A stretch of DNA of 63,719 nt, the filler included, from Octopus bimaculoides (lineage: Eukaryota), in NCBI RefSeq assembly GCF_001194135.2. It is 8 parts of 6 records of this genome, joined end to end, with 100 filler letters (N's around TTAATTAATTAA, not from the genome) between each part and the next. Parts side by side here need not be neighbours in the genome. Positions count along the whole stretch, not along the records: positions 52,301 to 54,973 come from NC_068988.1; 7 more parts are not named here. One strand, 5' to 3'. Below, one piece after another: positions 4,840-55,130 of this stretch (position 1 is the first letter of the stretch; every line of letters starts with the position of its first letter). Both the position numbers and the translations under genes were made by a program. The notes beneath the pieces are model-generated. The model saw only the letters and a program-made list of their open reading frames with translations. It did no database searches and had not been told where the DNA came from.

Positions 4840-6459
4840 TCACTTTTGCCTTCGCAGAATCTTCCCTGTTTACATTTTGGATTTTGAGTCCAACTCCAAG
4901 GTTCCTCGTCGTTACCGGATTGCTTTCCTTAAATAACTCTTGCTCAAAGCTTAGGAACACAAGGAAATTGCCTGGTGGCTGTGGTGGGATAGGAGCTCAA
5001 ATGCCTAGGAGCCCGATTCTGATCTTTGTAACATGTTGTCAATAAATACTGTAAGTTGCAGTGTACTGATTTTCCCTGGGGCCTATGATGATGCGAATAC
5101 GGCCTTGGGCTTGTCAGTATTCTTTTCTACAAGTATTCTTTTTCTATAATTCTTTGATCAGAATTCAGCCACTGAGAACACAGAACTTTATACCACTAGA
5201 TGGCAGATCAAAAAATATCAATCAACACCGTTCAGTCAAAAATTAAGTTACAACGGTCGACATGACTCATCAGCGTTATCTACCTTTTTGTCACAAGGTG
5301 ATGTCATACTGGTCAAACACTACCGATCCAAAGTTTTCAGCAAAAATATTGTCATTTTAATAAACAGGGTTAAGACGTGTGTATCAATGACGTTAACAGA
5401 AAATATGATACATTCACATATATTGAGAGCGTACAAGAGGGAGAAAGAGGGAGAGAGAGAGAGAGAGGAAGGGAGAGGGAGAGAGAATGGGTGATTGGTC
5501 TGAGAAGTCGTCATATTTTATACCATCAGTTGCTGGTTGTCCTTGGATGCCTTTAACAGAGCTCCCTCGTGGGTCTTTGAATTCCTCTCCGCCTACGTTT
5601 TTCCTGAATATATTCAGTTTGGATATTAGCCACATCAATTTCACCAACTTGAGAGGTACTGCAGCAGTCGTGTCAAACTTGCGATCTACGGAGCCATGTA
5701 TAGTCTGGCTCTCGACTCAATTTTATAAAAAAATTACTATTCCTATTTTTGGAATTTTAAAATATTCCGTCCAGAGTTGGGAATCTGAACAGAATCGTGA
5801 TTAACACCGGTTCTGTTTAGTAAAATCAATGCATTTTAAGGAATTTTTTGTTATCTCAACCATTGAAAAAATGAAATTTATGAATCTATACACTGAAGAC
5901 GTGACTTACTTTCCCTTCACTTTGTCTATACATGCCAAGTCAAACGCAAGTTTCTTTGCGTTTCAGATTTACGCACGTGAATGGATTGTAATATGAGTGA
6001 CATTGAAAGTTTTGCATCTGAAACAGTGCAAGTTTTTATTATTATTATTATTATCAAATATTGATCTTCTCATGAATTGTATGTATTCGGATAATTTCTA
6101 AGTGTTCTTCCTTCCAAGAACACTTAACAGGACTGTTTAAAACATGGACAGTAAATAATGATGATGGTGATGATGATTATAAGATCATTTTATTGTCAAC
6201 AACACAAATTACAACAACGCTTTATCTTCTTAGTCAGATGAAAGGTAAAGGATCGCACCATTAGATTCGTCACTCCTGACGGCAACTAAACTTACCAAAC
6301 TCTTTTTTGAATTCCCTTTATGGACTCACCAGCAACTATTTTCTCGAATTCCGAATTTTACATTGAGGATTAGATTTATTGTTACACAACAATCAAGATA
6401 TCACTGCTAGGTTCAAGTCCTACTTAGGCAATGTCAGCCAACAAAGTAACGATGATATA

Positions 6460-8130: not shown

Positions 8131-10554
8131 CTGCAATCGGAAAAGAAAAAGAAAGTCCAGAATTAATACAATTAAACATTCATATAGATAATATACAATT
8201 GACACGATATTCCATATAACTAGTTGATGTTATCTGAGAACTCTCGGTACCACTCGTTCGTACAGAGAAAAAGATATAAAGGAGATATTTTCTCAAAAGC
8301 TAAATCAAGTAAAGTGATATGTTCCGATGAATAAATAATAACAGTTTCTGATTTAGGCATAAGGATAGTAATTTGGAGGGGAAAAGAATTTCATCATTAC
8401 CATCGATATCATGTATTTAACAGGTAGTTTATTCGATCGCCTCCGAAAGAATGAAAGCTAAACTTGACATCGGCGAGATTTGAATTCAGAATGTAAAGGC
8501 CTGGAAGAAATACCCCAAGGCATTTTGTTCGACGTTCGTCGCTTAACCCATAGAGCGCTGGGATTTTTCACTCACATAGCATGGGCTGCTGAGCATATTT
8601 TATGAAAATGAGACTACCATGCACACATAAAAACCAAAAAAATAGTTAAAATATCTTCTTTGTATATAATGGTGGCAAGTTTTACATCGTCTGAAAATTC
8701 ATTAGTTGAGCTATTAGTCCTCTTGCATTCTGGTGGATATCGGAGCGTTTGAGTAACATTAGACCCTAACAAACGTCCATAAATTAAATACATCTATCTG
8801 GGCCATGATCGTGGTCTATCGACCTGTGCCTGGCGGCTACGATCGTGGCCCGTCGCGCTTTATGTGTTAAATAATATTTGCTTCTAATTTAGGTACAAGA
8901 CCAGAGTTTGAAAGAGGTTTGTCAATACCATAGAACTCAATACTTGAACAGTATTTTTATATTATCGATCCCGGTGGGATGAAAGGCAAAGCTGATCCCG
9001 GTGGGATGAAAGGCAAAGCTGACCTCGGCGGAATTTGATCTTAGAACGTAAAGAGCTAGAAAAATATCACATGGCATTTTGTGATTTTGGCACAAGACCA
9101 GTAGATTTTAGAGAAAGGGTTTTGTCAATCGACTCTTGAATTTGACTAGTACTTTGTTTTATCGACCCCAGAAGGACGAAAGCAAAGTTGACTTCGACAG
9201 GATTTTAACCCAGAACGTATAAGCTTGTATAGGCTGGGGGCAGGAGATGTGTGGNNNNNNNNNNNNNNNNNNNNNNNNNNNNNNNNNNNNNNNNNNNNNN
9301 NNNNNNNNNNNNNNNNNNNNNNNNNNNNNNNNNNNNNNNNNNNNNNNNNNNNNNNNNNNNNNNNNNNNNNNNNNNNNNNNNNNNNNNNNNNNNNNNNNNN
9401 NNNNNNNNNNNNNNNNNNNNNNNNNNNNNNNNNNNNNNNNNNNNNNNNNNNNNNNNNNNNNNNNNNNNNNNNNNNNNNNNNNNNNNNNNNNNNNNNNNNN
9501 NNNNNNNNNNNNNNNNNNNNNNNNNNNNNNNNNNNNNNNNNNNNNNNNNNNNNNNNNNNNNNNNNNNNNNNNNNNNNNNNNNNNNNNNNNNNNNNNNNNN
9601 NNNNNNNNNNNNNNNNNNNNNNNNNNNNNNNNNNNNNNNNNNNNNNNNNNNNNNNNNNNNNNNNNNNNNNNNNNNNNNNNNNNNNNNNNNNNNNNNNNNN
9701 NNNNNNNNNNNNNNNNNNNNNNNNNNNNNNNNNNNNNNNNNNNNNNNNNNNNNNNNNNNNNNNNNNNNNNNNNNNNNNNNNNNNNNNNNNNNNNNNNNNN
9801 NNNNNNNNNNNNNNNNNNNNNNNNNNNNNNNNNNNNNNNNNNNNNNNNNNNNNAAGCACTTGGTGGAGGTGCATTAATAATTCTGCCAGCTCCAATAACA
9901 AGTGCAGGCAATATTCAAGTATTTTGATGGCTTTTTCCCCTTTGTTTACGAACAGTCTAGTTAATCGGAAATGTCAGAACTAACGGGGATTAATACCATA
10001 TACACCGTCACAGCAGTAACTGTATTCAACTGAATAGACGTCAGTGATTAGTTGAAATTATCGAAATAAGACAATTTTTAACGTGAAATAACTTCGAATA
10101 CAAAATTTTTTATCTGTTCTATACCACAAAATATACAAGTATACGAAGTTTGAAAGTGTTTCGGTACCAAAAACACTACATAAAAAAATGTTGCCCGTCA
10201 AATCATAAAGGTCCCTCAAGGGCCACCCCACTGTACCTCCTGGCCCTTTGGTATCTTTAGCAGAGCCCACTCTGTTGCAAGTACTCGAGCCTGGTCTGAG
10301 ATTAGCTCGTTATCTTGACGTGCTATTTCCCACTGCAGCAACCGATGACTCAGGGTTTTTCTCCTCTTTTTCAATCATCAGTCACGAAGATACTGATAAA
10401 CGTGGTGGGCATTGCACCTCTCTTGCCCTTAAGTTATTAAGTCATAAAAATATACATAAGCAACTGCTTTAAGTAAGAAAAAAAGAAACCCTCACTGCTA
10501 AATAAAAGTTTCTGAACGACTGTAATAATTATTAATAGTTTCTTTCTACTGTAA

Positions 10555-52665: not shown

Positions 52666-52846
52666 TTATAATTCGTATTGCAGTTTCGGGATTTGACAAA
52701 CATAAAATTGCGTCAAATTGTTTCCCACTTCGAGTTGGATCGATTGATTTTGAAGAAAGTCTAATATGTATCATGATTGCTTCATCCAGTAATCACTTAA
52801 CAGCAGGCATTAAACGTCCACTTAAAGGATTGTTTCCAATCCATGT
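52666..52846 (-). pseudogene. Decayed GRL-type terminal (TM7) exon relic
   Basis: After a tttacag acceptor, frame +1 reads HGLETIL*VDV*CLLLSD...S*YILDFLQNQSIQLEVGN, resembling the GRL AH...L..V..L...FL..L....I.L.vG segment; three stops and out of phase with exon 1. Confidence 0.35.
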
Positions 52847-53159
52847 CTGTAAATATATATATTAGCAGTTATATCCTCTTCGTTGTATTACGGCACTCCA
52901 ATAATTTGAGGCCTTGTGCTTCCAATAGAAAGGATTATTTTTAAATGTGGTGTTGAGGATCCTTCTAGGCCTGCTATTTATCTTTCTGACTCTATGTGCG
53001 TGCTTGCTCTAATTATGAGTATTATTATCACAATTATTTCTACCGACTTTAGTGTTGTCTCTTGCGGTCTGGAATTTAGATTTTCGCCTAGCAATATCTA
53101 ATCAACCTTATCAACAATGCCAATTCATTTATACGCCGCATCATGTGGTGTGCATACAA

Positions 53160-53520
53160 TTTTGACTGAGACTAAGAGAAGAAATACCACACCACAAGAA
53201 TTACAGCATTTATTTAAATCTCAGAAATTTCCCCCACCTAATCTACAACTGGCTGTATTTTGAGATGAAACTCCCTCTAATAAAGAACTAACAACTAAGA
53301 AAAATGCATGTACAAGTCAAGAAACTCAAGAAGGAAATATACTAATTGGTCTATAATCTACATCAACCTCTGCTTAAAAAGGAAATCTCGAAAAGCTCCA
53401 AAATGGCACGTACAAATAACCTGATTTAAACTTGCAGGTTAAGAAAATAGTGGTGAAGTTACATTTGGGATTTAGATTTAGAAGTACTGGACATTACCTA
53501 ACATGAACCTTCAAATAAAT
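53160..53520 (-). mobile_element. CR1/L2-type LINE RT remnant in the GRL intron
   Basis: DYRPISIFPS motif (the YRPISL box) on the minus strand. Confidence 0.55.
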
Positions 53521-53606
53521 CTAAGAGACCATAAGCCTAACTTTACTAGTAATACATATATACATATATCAAATCATGATTCGTATAGATAACTTATAAC
53601 ACTTAC

Positions 53607-54560
53607 TGTTCGGTTTAAACGAAGTCCACACCAAAGCAATGTCACGTAAAAGACCATGTGAATGGTTGCCATCACTAGCGTATAAAGATATTCATATGGG
53701 GCATTTTTTAAAAAATTATTTATCATTCCATAAGTGGCAATGCAGCTGCTTATTATACAACTAAGGACAATAAATCCGGATGTTATCTGCCGTGATTCGT
53801 TGACAAATCTCAGTATTGTGCTTAGGGTATCGTGTCTATTACATATTTCTGCAATCTCTCTATGTGTCTTGAAAATAACAGTCTTATCTGATTGTTGTTC
53901 CTTTACGCAGTTTTGGACCTCATTCGCCACTTTCTTAAACTCATAAATAAGTGTAAGAGTGATTATAAGATCAAAATAGAGATCAAATAACACAGTCATT
54001 AAAGAGAAGCCATTGAATATGACTTGTATTGTTAAAACTGGAATGTAATATATATTATTTGTTGGTACAGGAAATGTTACAAACATCAGAAAATCGTTAC
54101 TGTAGAGCGGCAAAATAAGATCTATACAGATATAGAAAATGACAGTCCCGAATATATATACAAATAAAGTTGTATATGAATATATTAACTTAGTGTTATA
54201 ATATTTTCTACTTTCCTCTTCAATTTCAAGACCGGAGAATTTTTCAAATAGTTGCTTGTCGTTAGAATCCCTGAAGAGTTTCATCAAACAGAAAAGAGAT
54301 AAGAAACTCCTGTAAAAAAGTATGTAAAAATACACAAATATTCCACTTGTGTTAGCATTTTGCAGTTCTATTAAAGTCACAATATGCCGAATCGGGTTTA
54401 CAATCAAATATATAATGTACAATAAGTAAATTGCAGAGAAAAAAATTGCTTTCAACTCGAGTGCTTTCAGGATGGATTTATTCATAATATATTTCCGAAT
54501 ATTACAAATTTTTCGATATAATTCCAACATTTTAAAGAATTGTGTTTGATTTGCTTCCAT
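53607..54560 (-). CDS. Gustatory-receptor-like (GRL/7tm_7-type) chemoreceptor, first coding exon (TM1-TM6)
   Basis: 318 uninterrupted codons with six hydrophobic segments, the GR-type IC2 pattern (EF..VA....H..L..I...VN...S.FI) and ...LWCGLRLNRT followed by a phase-0 GTAAGT donor (53601-53606). No DRY/NPxxY GPCR motifs. Confidence 0.7.
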
Positions 54561-55130
54561 GCTTATTCTAATTCCGTCGTATTAGAAGAGTTTCCCTTTC
54601 AAATAGATGAACACGGTAATAGAGACCACGCGATGTATAAAGTAATTTTTAAAGTTTTCTGTTGTTTCTTTCTTGTATATTTTTGCCTGTGTTGTACAAT
54701 TTAATCTACCGTGAAAATGGAAACAATAACCGATTGCTAAATAAAGTAATTGCGAAAGGCTTATAGAAATTCGACAGCATCACTGTAAGATAGTTACAAT
54801 CATGTATTAATTCTATATAGTTTGAGCATTATGCTCTTTCAATACGATTCACAAAAAAACCGCGACGTTATGCTTGATGTTAATGTGTTATATTTCATAA
54901 GCACAATGAATGATATTCAAGTCCCATGTATTATCTGCGATAAATATACATAATATATATATATATATATATANNNNNNNNNNNNNNNNNNNNNNNNNNN
55001 NNNNNNNNNNNNNNNNNTTAATTAATTAANNNNNNNNNNNNNNNNNNNNNNNNNNNNNNNNNNNNNNNNNNNNAATTTGTACAGGCCATATGCCCGGAGT
55101 TTGGAAATTAAGGAGATAAAGGTGAATTTT

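What the first reader, a model, noticed from the sequence alone, without database searches (positions are those of the whole stretch)
53607..54560. Gustatory-receptor-like (insect GR/OR superfamily) gene in an octopus-type genome
Seen: a long intact 6-TM exon with the GR-type loop and TM5-TM6 pattern and a phase-0 intron right after TM6. Established: GRLs are 7-TM ligand-gated channel relatives of insect GRs/ORs and occur in molluscs and other invertebrates, whereas cephalopod chemosensation work has centred on nAChR-derived chemotactile receptors and GPCRs. Inference: a divergent member of a little-studied second ionotropic chemosensory family. I do not know whether it is already annotated.
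Basis: partly seen in the sequence, partly recalled or inferred. Interest (0 to 1): 0.75.

Follow-up and report, generated by a model that had tools for sequence, protein, structure and literature searches.

The report
Octopus gustatory-receptor-like gene, large 5' exon
This stretch holds an intact exon encoding the first six membrane helices of an octopus relative of insect taste and smell receptor channels. In the nearest sequenced octopus, such exons sit in tandem arrays that are each spliced to one shared set of three small exons encoding the seventh helix.

Summary
On the minus strand, 54560->53607 is an intact 318-codon exon. It starts at its own ATG and ends at a phase-0 GTAAGT donor just after a sixth hydrophobic helix. 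Its only relatives among billions of proteins are "uncharacterized" Octopus proteins.

Evidence for the insect GR/OR (7TMIC) superfamily:
- Pfam 7tm_7 is the best family hit to the window's own TM4-TM6 region, at E 4e-4, below threshold.
- Relatives, and a conceptual splice of this exon to O. sinensis 3' exons, pass the curated threshold end to end (about 34-35 bits; cut-off 26.6).
- An AlphaFold model of the full-length relative matches only insect OR/Orco/GR structures (TM 0.5-0.63).
- Charge distribution gives an N-terminus-inside topology, which argues against a GPCR.
- The relatives carry TM7 "TYILVVIQ" and three 3' phase-0 introns, the last six codons before TY, as described for GR genes.

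This is the design of Drosophila Gr39a. The window exon is most likely one such alternative 5' exon.

It is a new member of a known kind. Chemosensory function and splicing are inferred, not shown.

The parts
53607..54560 (-). Large 5' coding exon (318 codons). It has its own ATG at 54560-54558 and encodes the N-terminus and TM1-TM6 of a GR-like (7TMIC) subunit.
   Evidence: ORF. It is 61-62% identical to O. sinensis large exons. 7tm_7 signal. Model pLDDT 83.6. dN/dS is 0.5-0.7 against the closest paralogues or orthologues.
53601..53606 (-). Splice donor GTAAGT, phase 0, directly after codon 318 (…RLNRT|gtaagt).
   Evidence: Sequence. All five intact O. sinensis large exons carry a donor at the same codon position: four read TCG|gtaagt and one reads TCA|gtgagt.
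54393..54455 (-). TM1 (aa 36-56)
   Evidence: Hydropathy; helix 36-66 in the model.
54282..54344 (-). TM2 (aa 73-93). The preceding short loop carries an N-T-S sequon at N70 and is predicted to be extracellular.
54111..54179 (-). TM3 (aa 128-150)
53952..54041 (-). TM4 (aa 174-203). In the model it is the start of a long helix spanning aa 172-224.
53778..53951 (-). Long, charged loop between TM4 and TM5 (aa 204-261; 9 K+R), predicted to be intracellular. It holds the most conserved family motifs (YEFNK…ICNxHDxLS…VNES).
   Evidence: conservation.
53715..53777 (-). TM5 (aa 262-282)
53622..53684 (-). TM6 (aa 293-313)
54561..54751 (-). 5' flank conserved with the 5' flanks of O. sinensis large exons at L001 10001, 16398 and 6109. 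It is a candidate exon-specific promoter or 5' UTR; this role is an inference.
   Evidence: The blastn similarity (77-78%) runs through the exon to about 190 nt upstream of the ATG, but only about 25-50 nt past the donor. MAFFT aligns blocks out to about -400.
52301..53600 (-). First 1.3 kb of the intron after the large exon. It holds no TM7 or constant exon and shows no similarity to the O. sinensis locus.
   Evidence: tblastn with the P0002 C-terminus gave only chance-level hits. blastn. No tRNA or Rfam match.

Best explanation
The window holds one 'large exon' of an octopus gustatory-receptor-like (GRL) gene, a member of the GR/OR seven-transmembrane ion-channel superfamily. The exon carries its own start codon and encodes the cytoplasmic N-terminus and helices TM1-TM6. 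In solved insect receptors this part includes the helices that form the ligand pocket. The exon ends at a phase-0 donor. A functional subunit needs the exon spliced, across a long intron that runs beyond the piece, to three small exons. Those exons encode the last cytoplasmic segment and TM7, which carries the TYhhhhhQ pore-helix motif. In Octopus sinensis the small exons are present once per locus and are shared by a tandem array of large exons. Each transcript would therefore pair one variable sensing half with one constant pore helix, as in Drosophila Gr39a, Gr28b and Gr23a. The window exon is most likely one such alternative 5' exon. The product is most likely a subunit of a tetrameric ligand-gated cation channel, possibly chemosensory. 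Shown here: the exon, its frame, its donor, homology, fold class, topology, and the array design in O. sinensis. Inferred: that this particular exon is spliced to shared exons, that it is transcribed from its own promoter, that the product forms a channel, and that it senses chemicals.
For: Exon and donor:
- Intact 318-codon exon with ATG and GTAAGT donor; chance of such an ORF about 4e-12.
- dN/dS of 0.5-0.7 against the closest relatives, which indicates purifying selection.

Family:
- 7tm_7 is the best Pfam hit to window aa 173-318 (E 3.9e-4) and scores 34.9 bits end to end for the exon plus O. sinensis constant exons.
- Relatives pass the 7tm_7 cut-off, and P0023 also passes 7tm_6.
- hhalign links the window's subfamily to that subfamily at prob 98.9%, E 3e-17, over 336 columns.

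Fold and topology:
- The Foldseek top 18 matches are all insect OR/Orco/GR at TM 0.48-0.63, followed by a sharp drop.
- The exon-only model gives TM 0.51-0.53 to OR/Orco only.
- K+R count is 25 in the N-terminus, loops 2-3 and 4-5 and the post-TM6 segment, against 2 in the other loops. The predicted inside loops are long (35, 34 and 58 aa) and the outside loops short (16, 23 and 10 aa). These match criteria iii-v of Benton et al. 2020 (PMC7746228).

Gene structure in O. sinensis L001:
- Large exons lie at 1457, 6109 (degraded), 10001, 16398, 27558 and 42321. Each intact one has a donor at the same codon.
- There is one set of small exons (69, 90 and 54 nt plus stop), all flanked by AG...GT and all phase 0. 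The last intron lies six codons before TY.
- Conceptual splicing reproduces NCBI isoform X1 exactly and contains the 141-aa products of X2 and X3.
- Peñalva-Arana et al. [quoted passage not shown]
- Gr39a has four large 6-TM exons and three small exons encoding TM7 (PMC2204066).
- Neighbouring genes LOC118764607 and LOC118764605 likewise have isoforms with different N-terminal halves and identical C-termini.
Against: - The piece ends 1.3 kb into the intron, so no TM7 exon and no neighbouring large exon of the window's own genome can be seen.
- No transcript evidence for this exon was available. The Logan-derived relatives are all intron read-through ORFs, not spliced products.
- The whole exon gives no Pfam hit, and its profile has no PDB sequence hit.
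- The exon-only Foldseek E-values are not significant.
- The full-length model rests on a shallow alignment of 22 sequences and has low confidence over TM7 (pLDDT 34-52).
- The TM7 motif of the relatives ends in T rather than F.
- No non-arthropod GRL has a demonstrated ligand; this statement rests on my own knowledge and on the introduction of PMC7746228.
Confidence: 0.8

Rival explanations
1. The window holds a stand-alone GRL gene. Under this reading the large exon has its own private small TM7 exons further downstream, beyond the piece, and is not an alternative exon of a shared-exon array.
For: Most GR genes in most animals are single-product genes; Gr39a-type loci are the minority (5 of about 120 loci in D. 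melanogaster, PMC2204066). The piece shows only one large exon, and nothing downstream can be checked.
Against: All three related O. sinensis genes seen here have isoforms with different large exons and identical C-termini. In the 59.6-kb locus L001 there is only one set of small exons for six large exons. The window exon groups with the L001 10001/16398/6109 exons, including their 5' flank.
Confidence: 0.15
2. The exon is a silent or decaying paralogue, that is, a pseudo-exon that is no longer spliced or expressed.
For: Degraded large exons do occur in these arrays (L001 6109-6486 has a frameshift and a TA repeat). dN/dS against the nearest relatives is fairly high at 0.5-0.7. No transcript evidence was available.
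Against: All 318 codons are open in an AT-rich sequence where a stop is expected about every 13 codons. The ATG and a consensus GTAAGT donor are kept at the family's positions. dN/dS is below 1, and the nearly invariant family residues are present (for example N254, Y277, H243, G262, C273).
Confidence: 0.1
3. The product is a multi-pass membrane protein of another fold, such as a GPCR, a transporter, or a generic helical bundle that resembles GRs only through hydrophobic composition.
For: The whole exon has no Pfam or PDB sequence hit. The top Foldseek E-values for the exon-only model belong to ABC transporters.
Against: Those ABC and GPCR matches have TM 0.1-0.26 and rmsd 17-30 Å, against TM 0.51-0.53 for OR/Orco. 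The full-length relative matches only OR/Orco/GR. 7tm_7 and 7tm_6 pass their curated cut-offs in relatives and in the conceptual product. The topology is N-terminus-inside, the opposite of GPCRs. The GR-specific intron positions and TM7 motif are present in relatives.
Confidence: 0.02
4. The product is a true GRL channel whose role is not external chemoreception. It could, for example, have a developmental, internal-metabolite, light or temperature function.
For: Non-arthropod GRLs have no proven chemosensory role. One Nematostella GRL may act in body patterning (PMC7746228, introduction). From my own knowledge, some insect GRs sense heat or light.
Against: Tandem arrays of fast-diverging large exons with near-identical constant exons (40-64% against about 95% identity) are the pattern expected of receptors that diversify ligand specificity. 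This argument is circumstantial.
Confidence: 0.3

Closest known systems
Drosophila Gr39a (also Gr28b, Gr23a): alternatively spliced GR loci
   Same: Several tandem large exons each have their own ATG, encode six TM helices and end in a 5' donor. They are followed by three small shared exons that encode TM7 and the C-terminus. The first acceptor appears only at the small-exon block. Degraded large exons occur. The small exons are far more conserved than the large ones (PMC2204066, compared).
   Different: Sequence identity to insect GRs is only about 10-14%. The octopus introns are far longer: the X1 first intron is about 35.7 kb. Whether the design is inherited or arose independently on the shared ancestral intron positions is unknown. 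For the window itself only one large exon is visible.
Insect gustatory and odorant receptors with solved structures (BmGr9, DmGr43a, Gr64a, Orco, MhOR5, AgOR28); Pfam 7tm_7 and 7tm_6
   Same: They share the fold (TM 0.48-0.63 over about 380 columns). They also share the N-terminus-inside 7-TM topology with long inside loops, the TM7 TY…Q motif, the 3' phase-0 introns, and Pfam scores above the cut-off in relatives.
   Different: The sequences are very divergent. The window's subfamily often falls below HMMER's filters. The motif ends in Q-T rather than Q-F. No ligand, tetramer or channel data exist.
GRLs of other molluscs and non-arthropod animals (Aplysia, Lottia, annelids, cnidarians, echinoderms)
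   Same: They belong to the same superfamily. Its presence in Mollusca is already established (PMC7746228 citing Robertson 2015; PMC5850775).
   Different: No non-octopus protein was retrieved with this family as query in any search, so the octopus set is a divergent clade that appears lineage-specific. I found no paper in the searchable library that describes cephalopod GRLs.
Clustered protocadherins / UGT1A (variable first exons plus constant exons)
   Same: The gene logic is the same: a tandem array of long variable first exons, each with a conserved 5' flank, spliced to shared constant exons.
   Different: The proteins are unrelated. Promoter choice has not been shown here, and the conserved 5' flank is only suggestive.
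Octopus chemotactile receptors (CRs, derived from nicotinic receptors)
   Same: Both are candidate ionotropic sensory receptor families that are expanded in octopus (PMC11526382).
   Different: CRs have an unrelated fold (pentameric Cys-loop) and have demonstrated ligands and sucker expression. This family has neither.

Membership tests
GR/GRL family (Pfam 7tm_7 PF08395; 7TMIC superfamily) | Profile match to 7tm_7 at or above the curated cut-off (26.6 bits) | tested here: inconclusive
   Window sequence alone: the whole exon gives no hit. Residues 173-318 give 7tm_7 as the best family, but at 20.3 bits and E 3.9e-4, below the cut-off. The cut-off is met for the conceptual product of the window exon plus O. 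sinensis small exons (34.9 bits, profile 32-367 of 370). It is also met for relatives P0021 (33.8), P0023 (35.1), P0020 (30.3) and P0011 (27.4). hhalign links these relatives to the window at prob 98.9%.
GR/GRL family (Pfam 7tm_7 PF08395; 7TMIC superfamily) | Seven TM helices, intracellular N-terminus, and intracellular loops longer than extracellular loops (criteria iii-v of PMC7746228) | tested here: met
   The exon holds six TM helices. K+R count is 25 on the predicted inside against 2 on the outside. Inside segments are 35, 34 and 58 aa; outside loops are 16, 23 and 10 aa. The seventh helix is seen only in relatives (P0002 aa 366-385), not in the piece.
GR/GRL family (Pfam 7tm_7 PF08395; 7TMIC superfamily) | TM7 motif TYhhhhhQF | not testable with these tools
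   TM7 lies outside the piece. Relatives have GSFITYILVVIQT and GSIITYSIVAYQT, so T, Y and Q are kept and the final F is replaced by T.
GR/GRL family (Pfam 7tm_7 PF08395; 7TMIC superfamily) | [quoted passage not shown] | tested here: met
   The window has a phase-0 GTAAGT donor directly after TM6. O. sinensis has three phase-0 introns (small exons of 69, 90 and 54 nt), and the last exon begins MIGSFI|TY, exactly six codons before TY. The second and third introns cannot be seen in the window.
GR/GRL family (Pfam 7tm_7 PF08395; 7TMIC superfamily) | OR/GR fold | tested here: met
   For the full-length relative, the top 18 PDB matches are all OR/Orco/GR at prob 1.00 and TM 0.48-0.63, with the rest below 0.25. 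For the window exon model (pLDDT 83.6), the only matches with TM above 0.5 are OR/Orco (0.51-0.53, prob 0.87-0.99), although E-values are 0.3-0.7.
GR/GRL family (Pfam 7tm_7 PF08395; 7TMIC superfamily) | Tetrameric ligand-gated cation channel activity | not testable with these tools
   This needs heterologous expression, electrophysiology or cryo-EM.
Gr39a-type complex locus (alternative large exons plus shared small exons) | Large exon with its own start codon, six TM helices and a 5' donor, but no upstream acceptor | tested here: met
   The window has its ATG at 54560 and its donor at 53606. The upstream sequence '…gaattagaataagc|ATG' has no polypyrimidine-AG acceptor. The same is true of the O. 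sinensis large exons.
Gr39a-type complex locus (alternative large exons plus shared small exons) | Several tandem large exons followed by one shared block of three small exons encoding TM7 | not testable with these tools
   This cannot be seen in the 2.7-kb piece. It is met in O. sinensis L001, which has five intact large exons, one degraded large exon and one small-exon block. Isoform X1 is reproduced exactly, and the 141-aa products of X2 and X3 are contained in the conceptual products.
Gr39a-type complex locus (alternative large exons plus shared small exons) | Transcripts showing mutually exclusive use of the large exons | not tested
   Only NCBI model isoforms were available, not reads. 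The Logan-derived relatives are unspliced read-through ORFs.
Rhodopsin-like or other GPCR chemoreceptors | Extracellular N-terminus, GPCR fold and GPCR profile match | tested here: not met
   The positive-inside count places the N-terminus inside. There is no GPCR Pfam hit. GPCR structures match at TM 0.16-0.20 only.

The most novel reading that the evidence does not exclude
Octopuses carry a lineage-specific, fast-diverging set of GR-like channel genes that has gone undescribed. The genes are built as arrays of alternative 6-TM exons spliced to a shared pore-helix module. Each sensory cell could then pick one variable exon, by promoter choice, from an array. This would give cephalopods a second ionotropic chemosensory repertoire alongside the nicotinic-derived chemotactile receptors. 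The array design would be either retained since the protostome ancestor or reinvented on the same ancestral introns as in flies.
Probability: 0.3. Interest if true: 0.75.

Novelty: new member of a known kind. Interest (0 to 1): 0.5.

Why it matters
GR-like channels are known in molluscs, but no ligand or role is known for any of them outside arthropods. Work on cephalopod chemosensation has centred on chemotactile receptors and GPCRs. This locus adds three things.

- It gives solid evidence that octopus genomes encode a divergent GRL clade, so far annotated only as "uncharacterized protein".
- In the nearest sequenced octopus the genes use the same design as Drosophila Gr39a, with many large exons and three shared small exons. 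That bears on whether this design is ancestral to protostome GR genes or recurs because of the conserved 3' introns.
- It shows that gene counts from automatic annotation will understate the repertoire. Two others are modelled only as 141-aa products, and the window's own exon is absent from the protein collection.

The octopus arm and sucker system is experimentally tractable, so the family could provide a test of what non-arthropod GRLs do.

Tried and rejected
- Pfam on the whole exon and on full-length P0002 and P0001 gave no 7tm_7 hit. The signal appeared only with sub-fragments, the conceptual spliced product and other relatives.
- PDB sequence searches with the exon and with the family profile gave only chance hits: histidinol-phosphate aminotransferase at E 0.09 and ferritin at E 2.
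- tblastn for the TM7 and constant exons inside the piece found nothing better than chance.
- Foldseek with the exon-only model gave no significant E-value. The ABC-transporter hits at the top are spurious (TM ≤0.26, rmsd about 20 Å).
- Look-up of the exact 328-aa ORF in public assemblies found nothing on record. Look-ups of P0018 and P0019 loci also found nothing on record. The P0021 locus is too long to fetch.
- The homologue searches found only octopus-derived proteins: 16 hits in 1.84 billion representatives, 12 with the profile and 3 with P0021. The family could therefore not be linked directly to other mollusc GRLs.
- The source species could not be identified. The nearest DNA is 77-78% identical.
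- The literature search found no paper on cephalopod GRLs in the searchable library. Robertson 2015 and Robertson et al. 2003 are not held.
- tRNA, Rfam and tandem-repeat scans of the piece found only (AT)n runs.
- The GPCR and transporter readings were rejected on topology, profile and fold.

Full report
**1. What is in the sequence**

The piece (52301-54973) is AT-rich, at about 32% G+C, and both ends are (AT)n runs. On the minus strand one ORF stands out, 54560->53574, 328 aa. The other ORFs of at least 40 aa that lie within the piece are 41-70 aa long. At this composition a stop is expected about every 13 codons, so a 328-codon open frame has a chance of about 4e-12.

The ORF starts at an ATG (54560-54558). 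After codon 318 (…GLRLNRT, ACA at 53609-53607) the sequence reads GTAAGT (53606-53601). The last ten codons of the ORF are therefore intron read-through, and the exon is 54560->53607 with a phase-0 donor.

Hydropathy shows six hydrophobic segments and a 58-residue charged loop between the fourth and fifth.

**2. Relatives**

A word-indexed search of 5.8 billion protein clusters found two hits. A full HMMER scan of 1.84 billion representatives found 16. Every hit that carries a name is an 'uncharacterized protein' of Octopus sinensis or O. bimaculoides. The rest are unnamed ORFs from Logan assemblies that end in intron read-through just like the window's ORF.

The best matches are 61-62% identical. 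At the DNA level the exon plus about 190 nt upstream is 77-78% identical to two exons of O. sinensis LOC118764608. The exact sequence is not in the collection. The 'octopus-type genome' reading is reasonable, but the species is not identified.

**3. Family membership**

Sequence profiles:
- The whole exon and the full-length relative P0002 give no Pfam hit.
- Other members of the same octopus family pass the curated cut-off of Pfam 7tm_7 (PF08395, the insect gustatory receptor family; 26.6 bits). P0021 scores 33.8 bits over profile positions 31-365 of 370, P0023 35.1, P0020 30.3 and P0011 27.4. P0023 also passes 7tm_6, the odorant receptor family, at 36.5 bits.
- A profile of the window's subfamily aligns to a profile of the P0021/P0023 subfamily at 98.9% probability, E 3e-17, over 336 columns.
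- On the window's own sequence, residues 173-318 (TM4-TM6) have 7tm_7 as their best Pfam family (20.3 bits, E 3.9e-4, collinear with profile 164-287), which is below the cut-off.
- A conceptual product of the window exon joined to the three O. sinensis 3' exons scores 34.9 bits (E 1.4e-8) over profile 32-367.

Fold:
- An AlphaFold2 model of P0002 (22-sequence alignment, pLDDT 75, pTM 0.73; TM7 region at low confidence) was compared with the PDB.
- The first 18 matches are all insect receptors: AgOR28, Orco, BmGr9, MhOR5, ApOR5-Orco, DmGr43a, Gr64a and AaOR10. They match at probability 1.00 and TM-score 0.48-0.63 over about 380 columns.
- The next matches fall to probability below 0.3 and TM below 0.25.
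- The model of the window exon alone (pLDDT 83.6, pTM 0.81) gives no significant Foldseek E-value. Its only matches above TM 0.5 are again OR/Orco (0.51-0.53). The ABC-transporter and GPCR matches listed around them have TM 0.1-0.26 and rmsd of 17-30 Å.

Topology:
- Lys+Arg count is 25 in the N-terminus, loops 2-3 and 4-5 and the post-TM6 segment, against 2 in loops 1-2, 3-4 and 5-6.
- The first set of segments is long (35, 34 and 58 aa) and the second short (16, 23 and 10 aa).
- This is the N-terminus-inside, long-inside-loop pattern used as a criterion for GRLs (PMC7746228). It is the opposite of GPCR topology.

**4. Gene structure, and what the exon is for**

The O. sinensis gene for P0002 spans 39.6 kb. 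In the 59.6-kb locus L001, tblastn finds six copies of the large exon on one strand, at 1457, 6109, 10001, 16398, 27558 and 42321. The copy at 6109 is degraded by a frameshift and an (AT)n run. Only one copy of the C-terminal coding sequence is present, split into three small exons at 46673-46741, 47649-47738 and 49533-49589.

Every intact large exon has an open frame from its N-terminus (four of the five start at an ATG) and a donor at the same codon as in the window; four read TCG|gtaagt and one reads TCA|gtgagt. The small exons are 69, 90 and 54 nt (plus stop), are flanked by AG…GT, and are all in phase 0. Joining exon 10001 to the small exons reproduces NCBI isoform X1 exactly. The conceptual products for exons 16398 and 27558 contain isoforms X2 and X3.

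The neighbouring genes LOC118764607 and LOC118764605, and O. bimaculoides LOC106880719, also have isoforms with different N-terminal halves and the same C-terminus.

The last small exon begins MIGSFI|TYILVVIQTKPL. The intron therefore lies exactly six codons before a TYhhhhhQ motif in TM7. [quoted passage not shown] The window's intron corresponds to the first of these three.

**5. Most likely mechanism**

The window exon is most likely one alternative 5' exon of such a locus. It would be transcribed from its own upstream region. About 190 nt of 5' flank, and looser blocks out to about 400 nt, align with the flanks of the three closest O. sinensis large exons, whereas similarity stops 25-50 nt into the intron. 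The exon would then be spliced over a long intron to shared small exons.

Based on solved insect receptors (my knowledge of Butterwick et al. 2018 and later GR structures), the large exon would supply the ligand-pocket helices. The shared exons would supply the pore-lining TM7. The array would then diversify specificity on a constant pore.

The large exons differ by 36-64% in protein, with dN/dS of 0.27-0.71, all below 1. The constant region is nearly identical between genes.

Channel function, tetramer formation, promoter use, splicing of this particular exon and a chemosensory role are all inferences. No transcript data or flanking scaffold were available.

**6. Rivals**

- A stand-alone gene with private TM7 exons beyond the piece cannot be excluded (confidence about 0.15).
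- A silent pseudo-exon is unlikely, given the intact frame, start codon, donor and conserved residues (about 0.1).
- Another fold is effectively excluded (about 0.02).
- A GRL with a non-chemosensory role remains quite possible (about 0.3), because no non-arthropod GRL has a known ligand.

**7. Novelty**

GRLs in Mollusca are established (PMC7746228; PMC5850775), and alternatively spliced GR loci are established in insects. What seems undescribed in the literature I could search is a cephalopod GRL clade and its Gr39a-type organisation.

Automatic annotation calls these proteins uncharacterized. It models some large exons only as 141-aa fragments. I rate this as a new member of a known kind, of moderate interest to people working on chemoreceptor evolution and cephalopod sensory biology.

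Noticed in passing
window 52301-52346 and 54940-54973: Both ends of the piece are imperfect (AT)n microsatellites. A short ATACATAT repeat sits at 53552-53569, just inside the intron. (AT)n runs also interrupt the degraded large exon in O. sinensis (L001 about 6486) and lie upstream of the exons at 1457 and 27558.
   Followed up: partly
window 54621-54650 (minus strand; about 75-80 nt upstream of the ATG): An A/T-rich 'CTTTATACATCG(C/T)GTGGTC' block is conserved in the 5' flanks of the window exon and of the O. sinensis large exons at 10001, 16398 and 6109. It could be a TATA-like core promoter element for each large exon, but this was not tested.
   Followed up: no
L001 6109-6486 (O. sinensis): This is a degraded sixth large exon. 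The first about 128 codons align, followed by a frameshift with stops and an (AT)n run. It parallels the pseudo-exons reported at Drosophila Gr39a.
   Followed up: partly
The exon at 1457 lies upstream of the annotated gene start. Isoforms X2 and X3 are modelled as 141-aa products that start inside large exons whose full frames are open. The annotated repertoire is probably an undercount.
   Followed up: partly
O. sinensis LOC118764607 isoforms (P0019, P0020 compared with P0011): X2 and X4 join the large exon directly to 'DIKPEVVAK…', whereas X3 keeps 'VHSITRSIHYMQFQ' before it. This suggests an alternative acceptor inside the first small exon.
   Followed up: no
P0023 (O. sinensis LOC118764605 isoform X2): This mollusc protein passes the cut-off of Pfam 7tm_6, the insect odorant-receptor family, at 36.5 bits, slightly better than its 7tm_7 score of 35.1 bits. 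ORs are held to be insect-specific, so this most likely reflects overlap between the two Pfam models rather than OR ancestry.
   Followed up: no
P0015 (Logan-derived, 360 aa): This is a chimeric read-through ORF. It has an unrelated N-terminal 150 aa, then a fragment of one large exon (TM3-TM4), then the N-terminus of another ('MELKETRFYKILQFYGKI…'). It hints at closely packed or rearranged large exons in another octopod genome.
   Followed up: no
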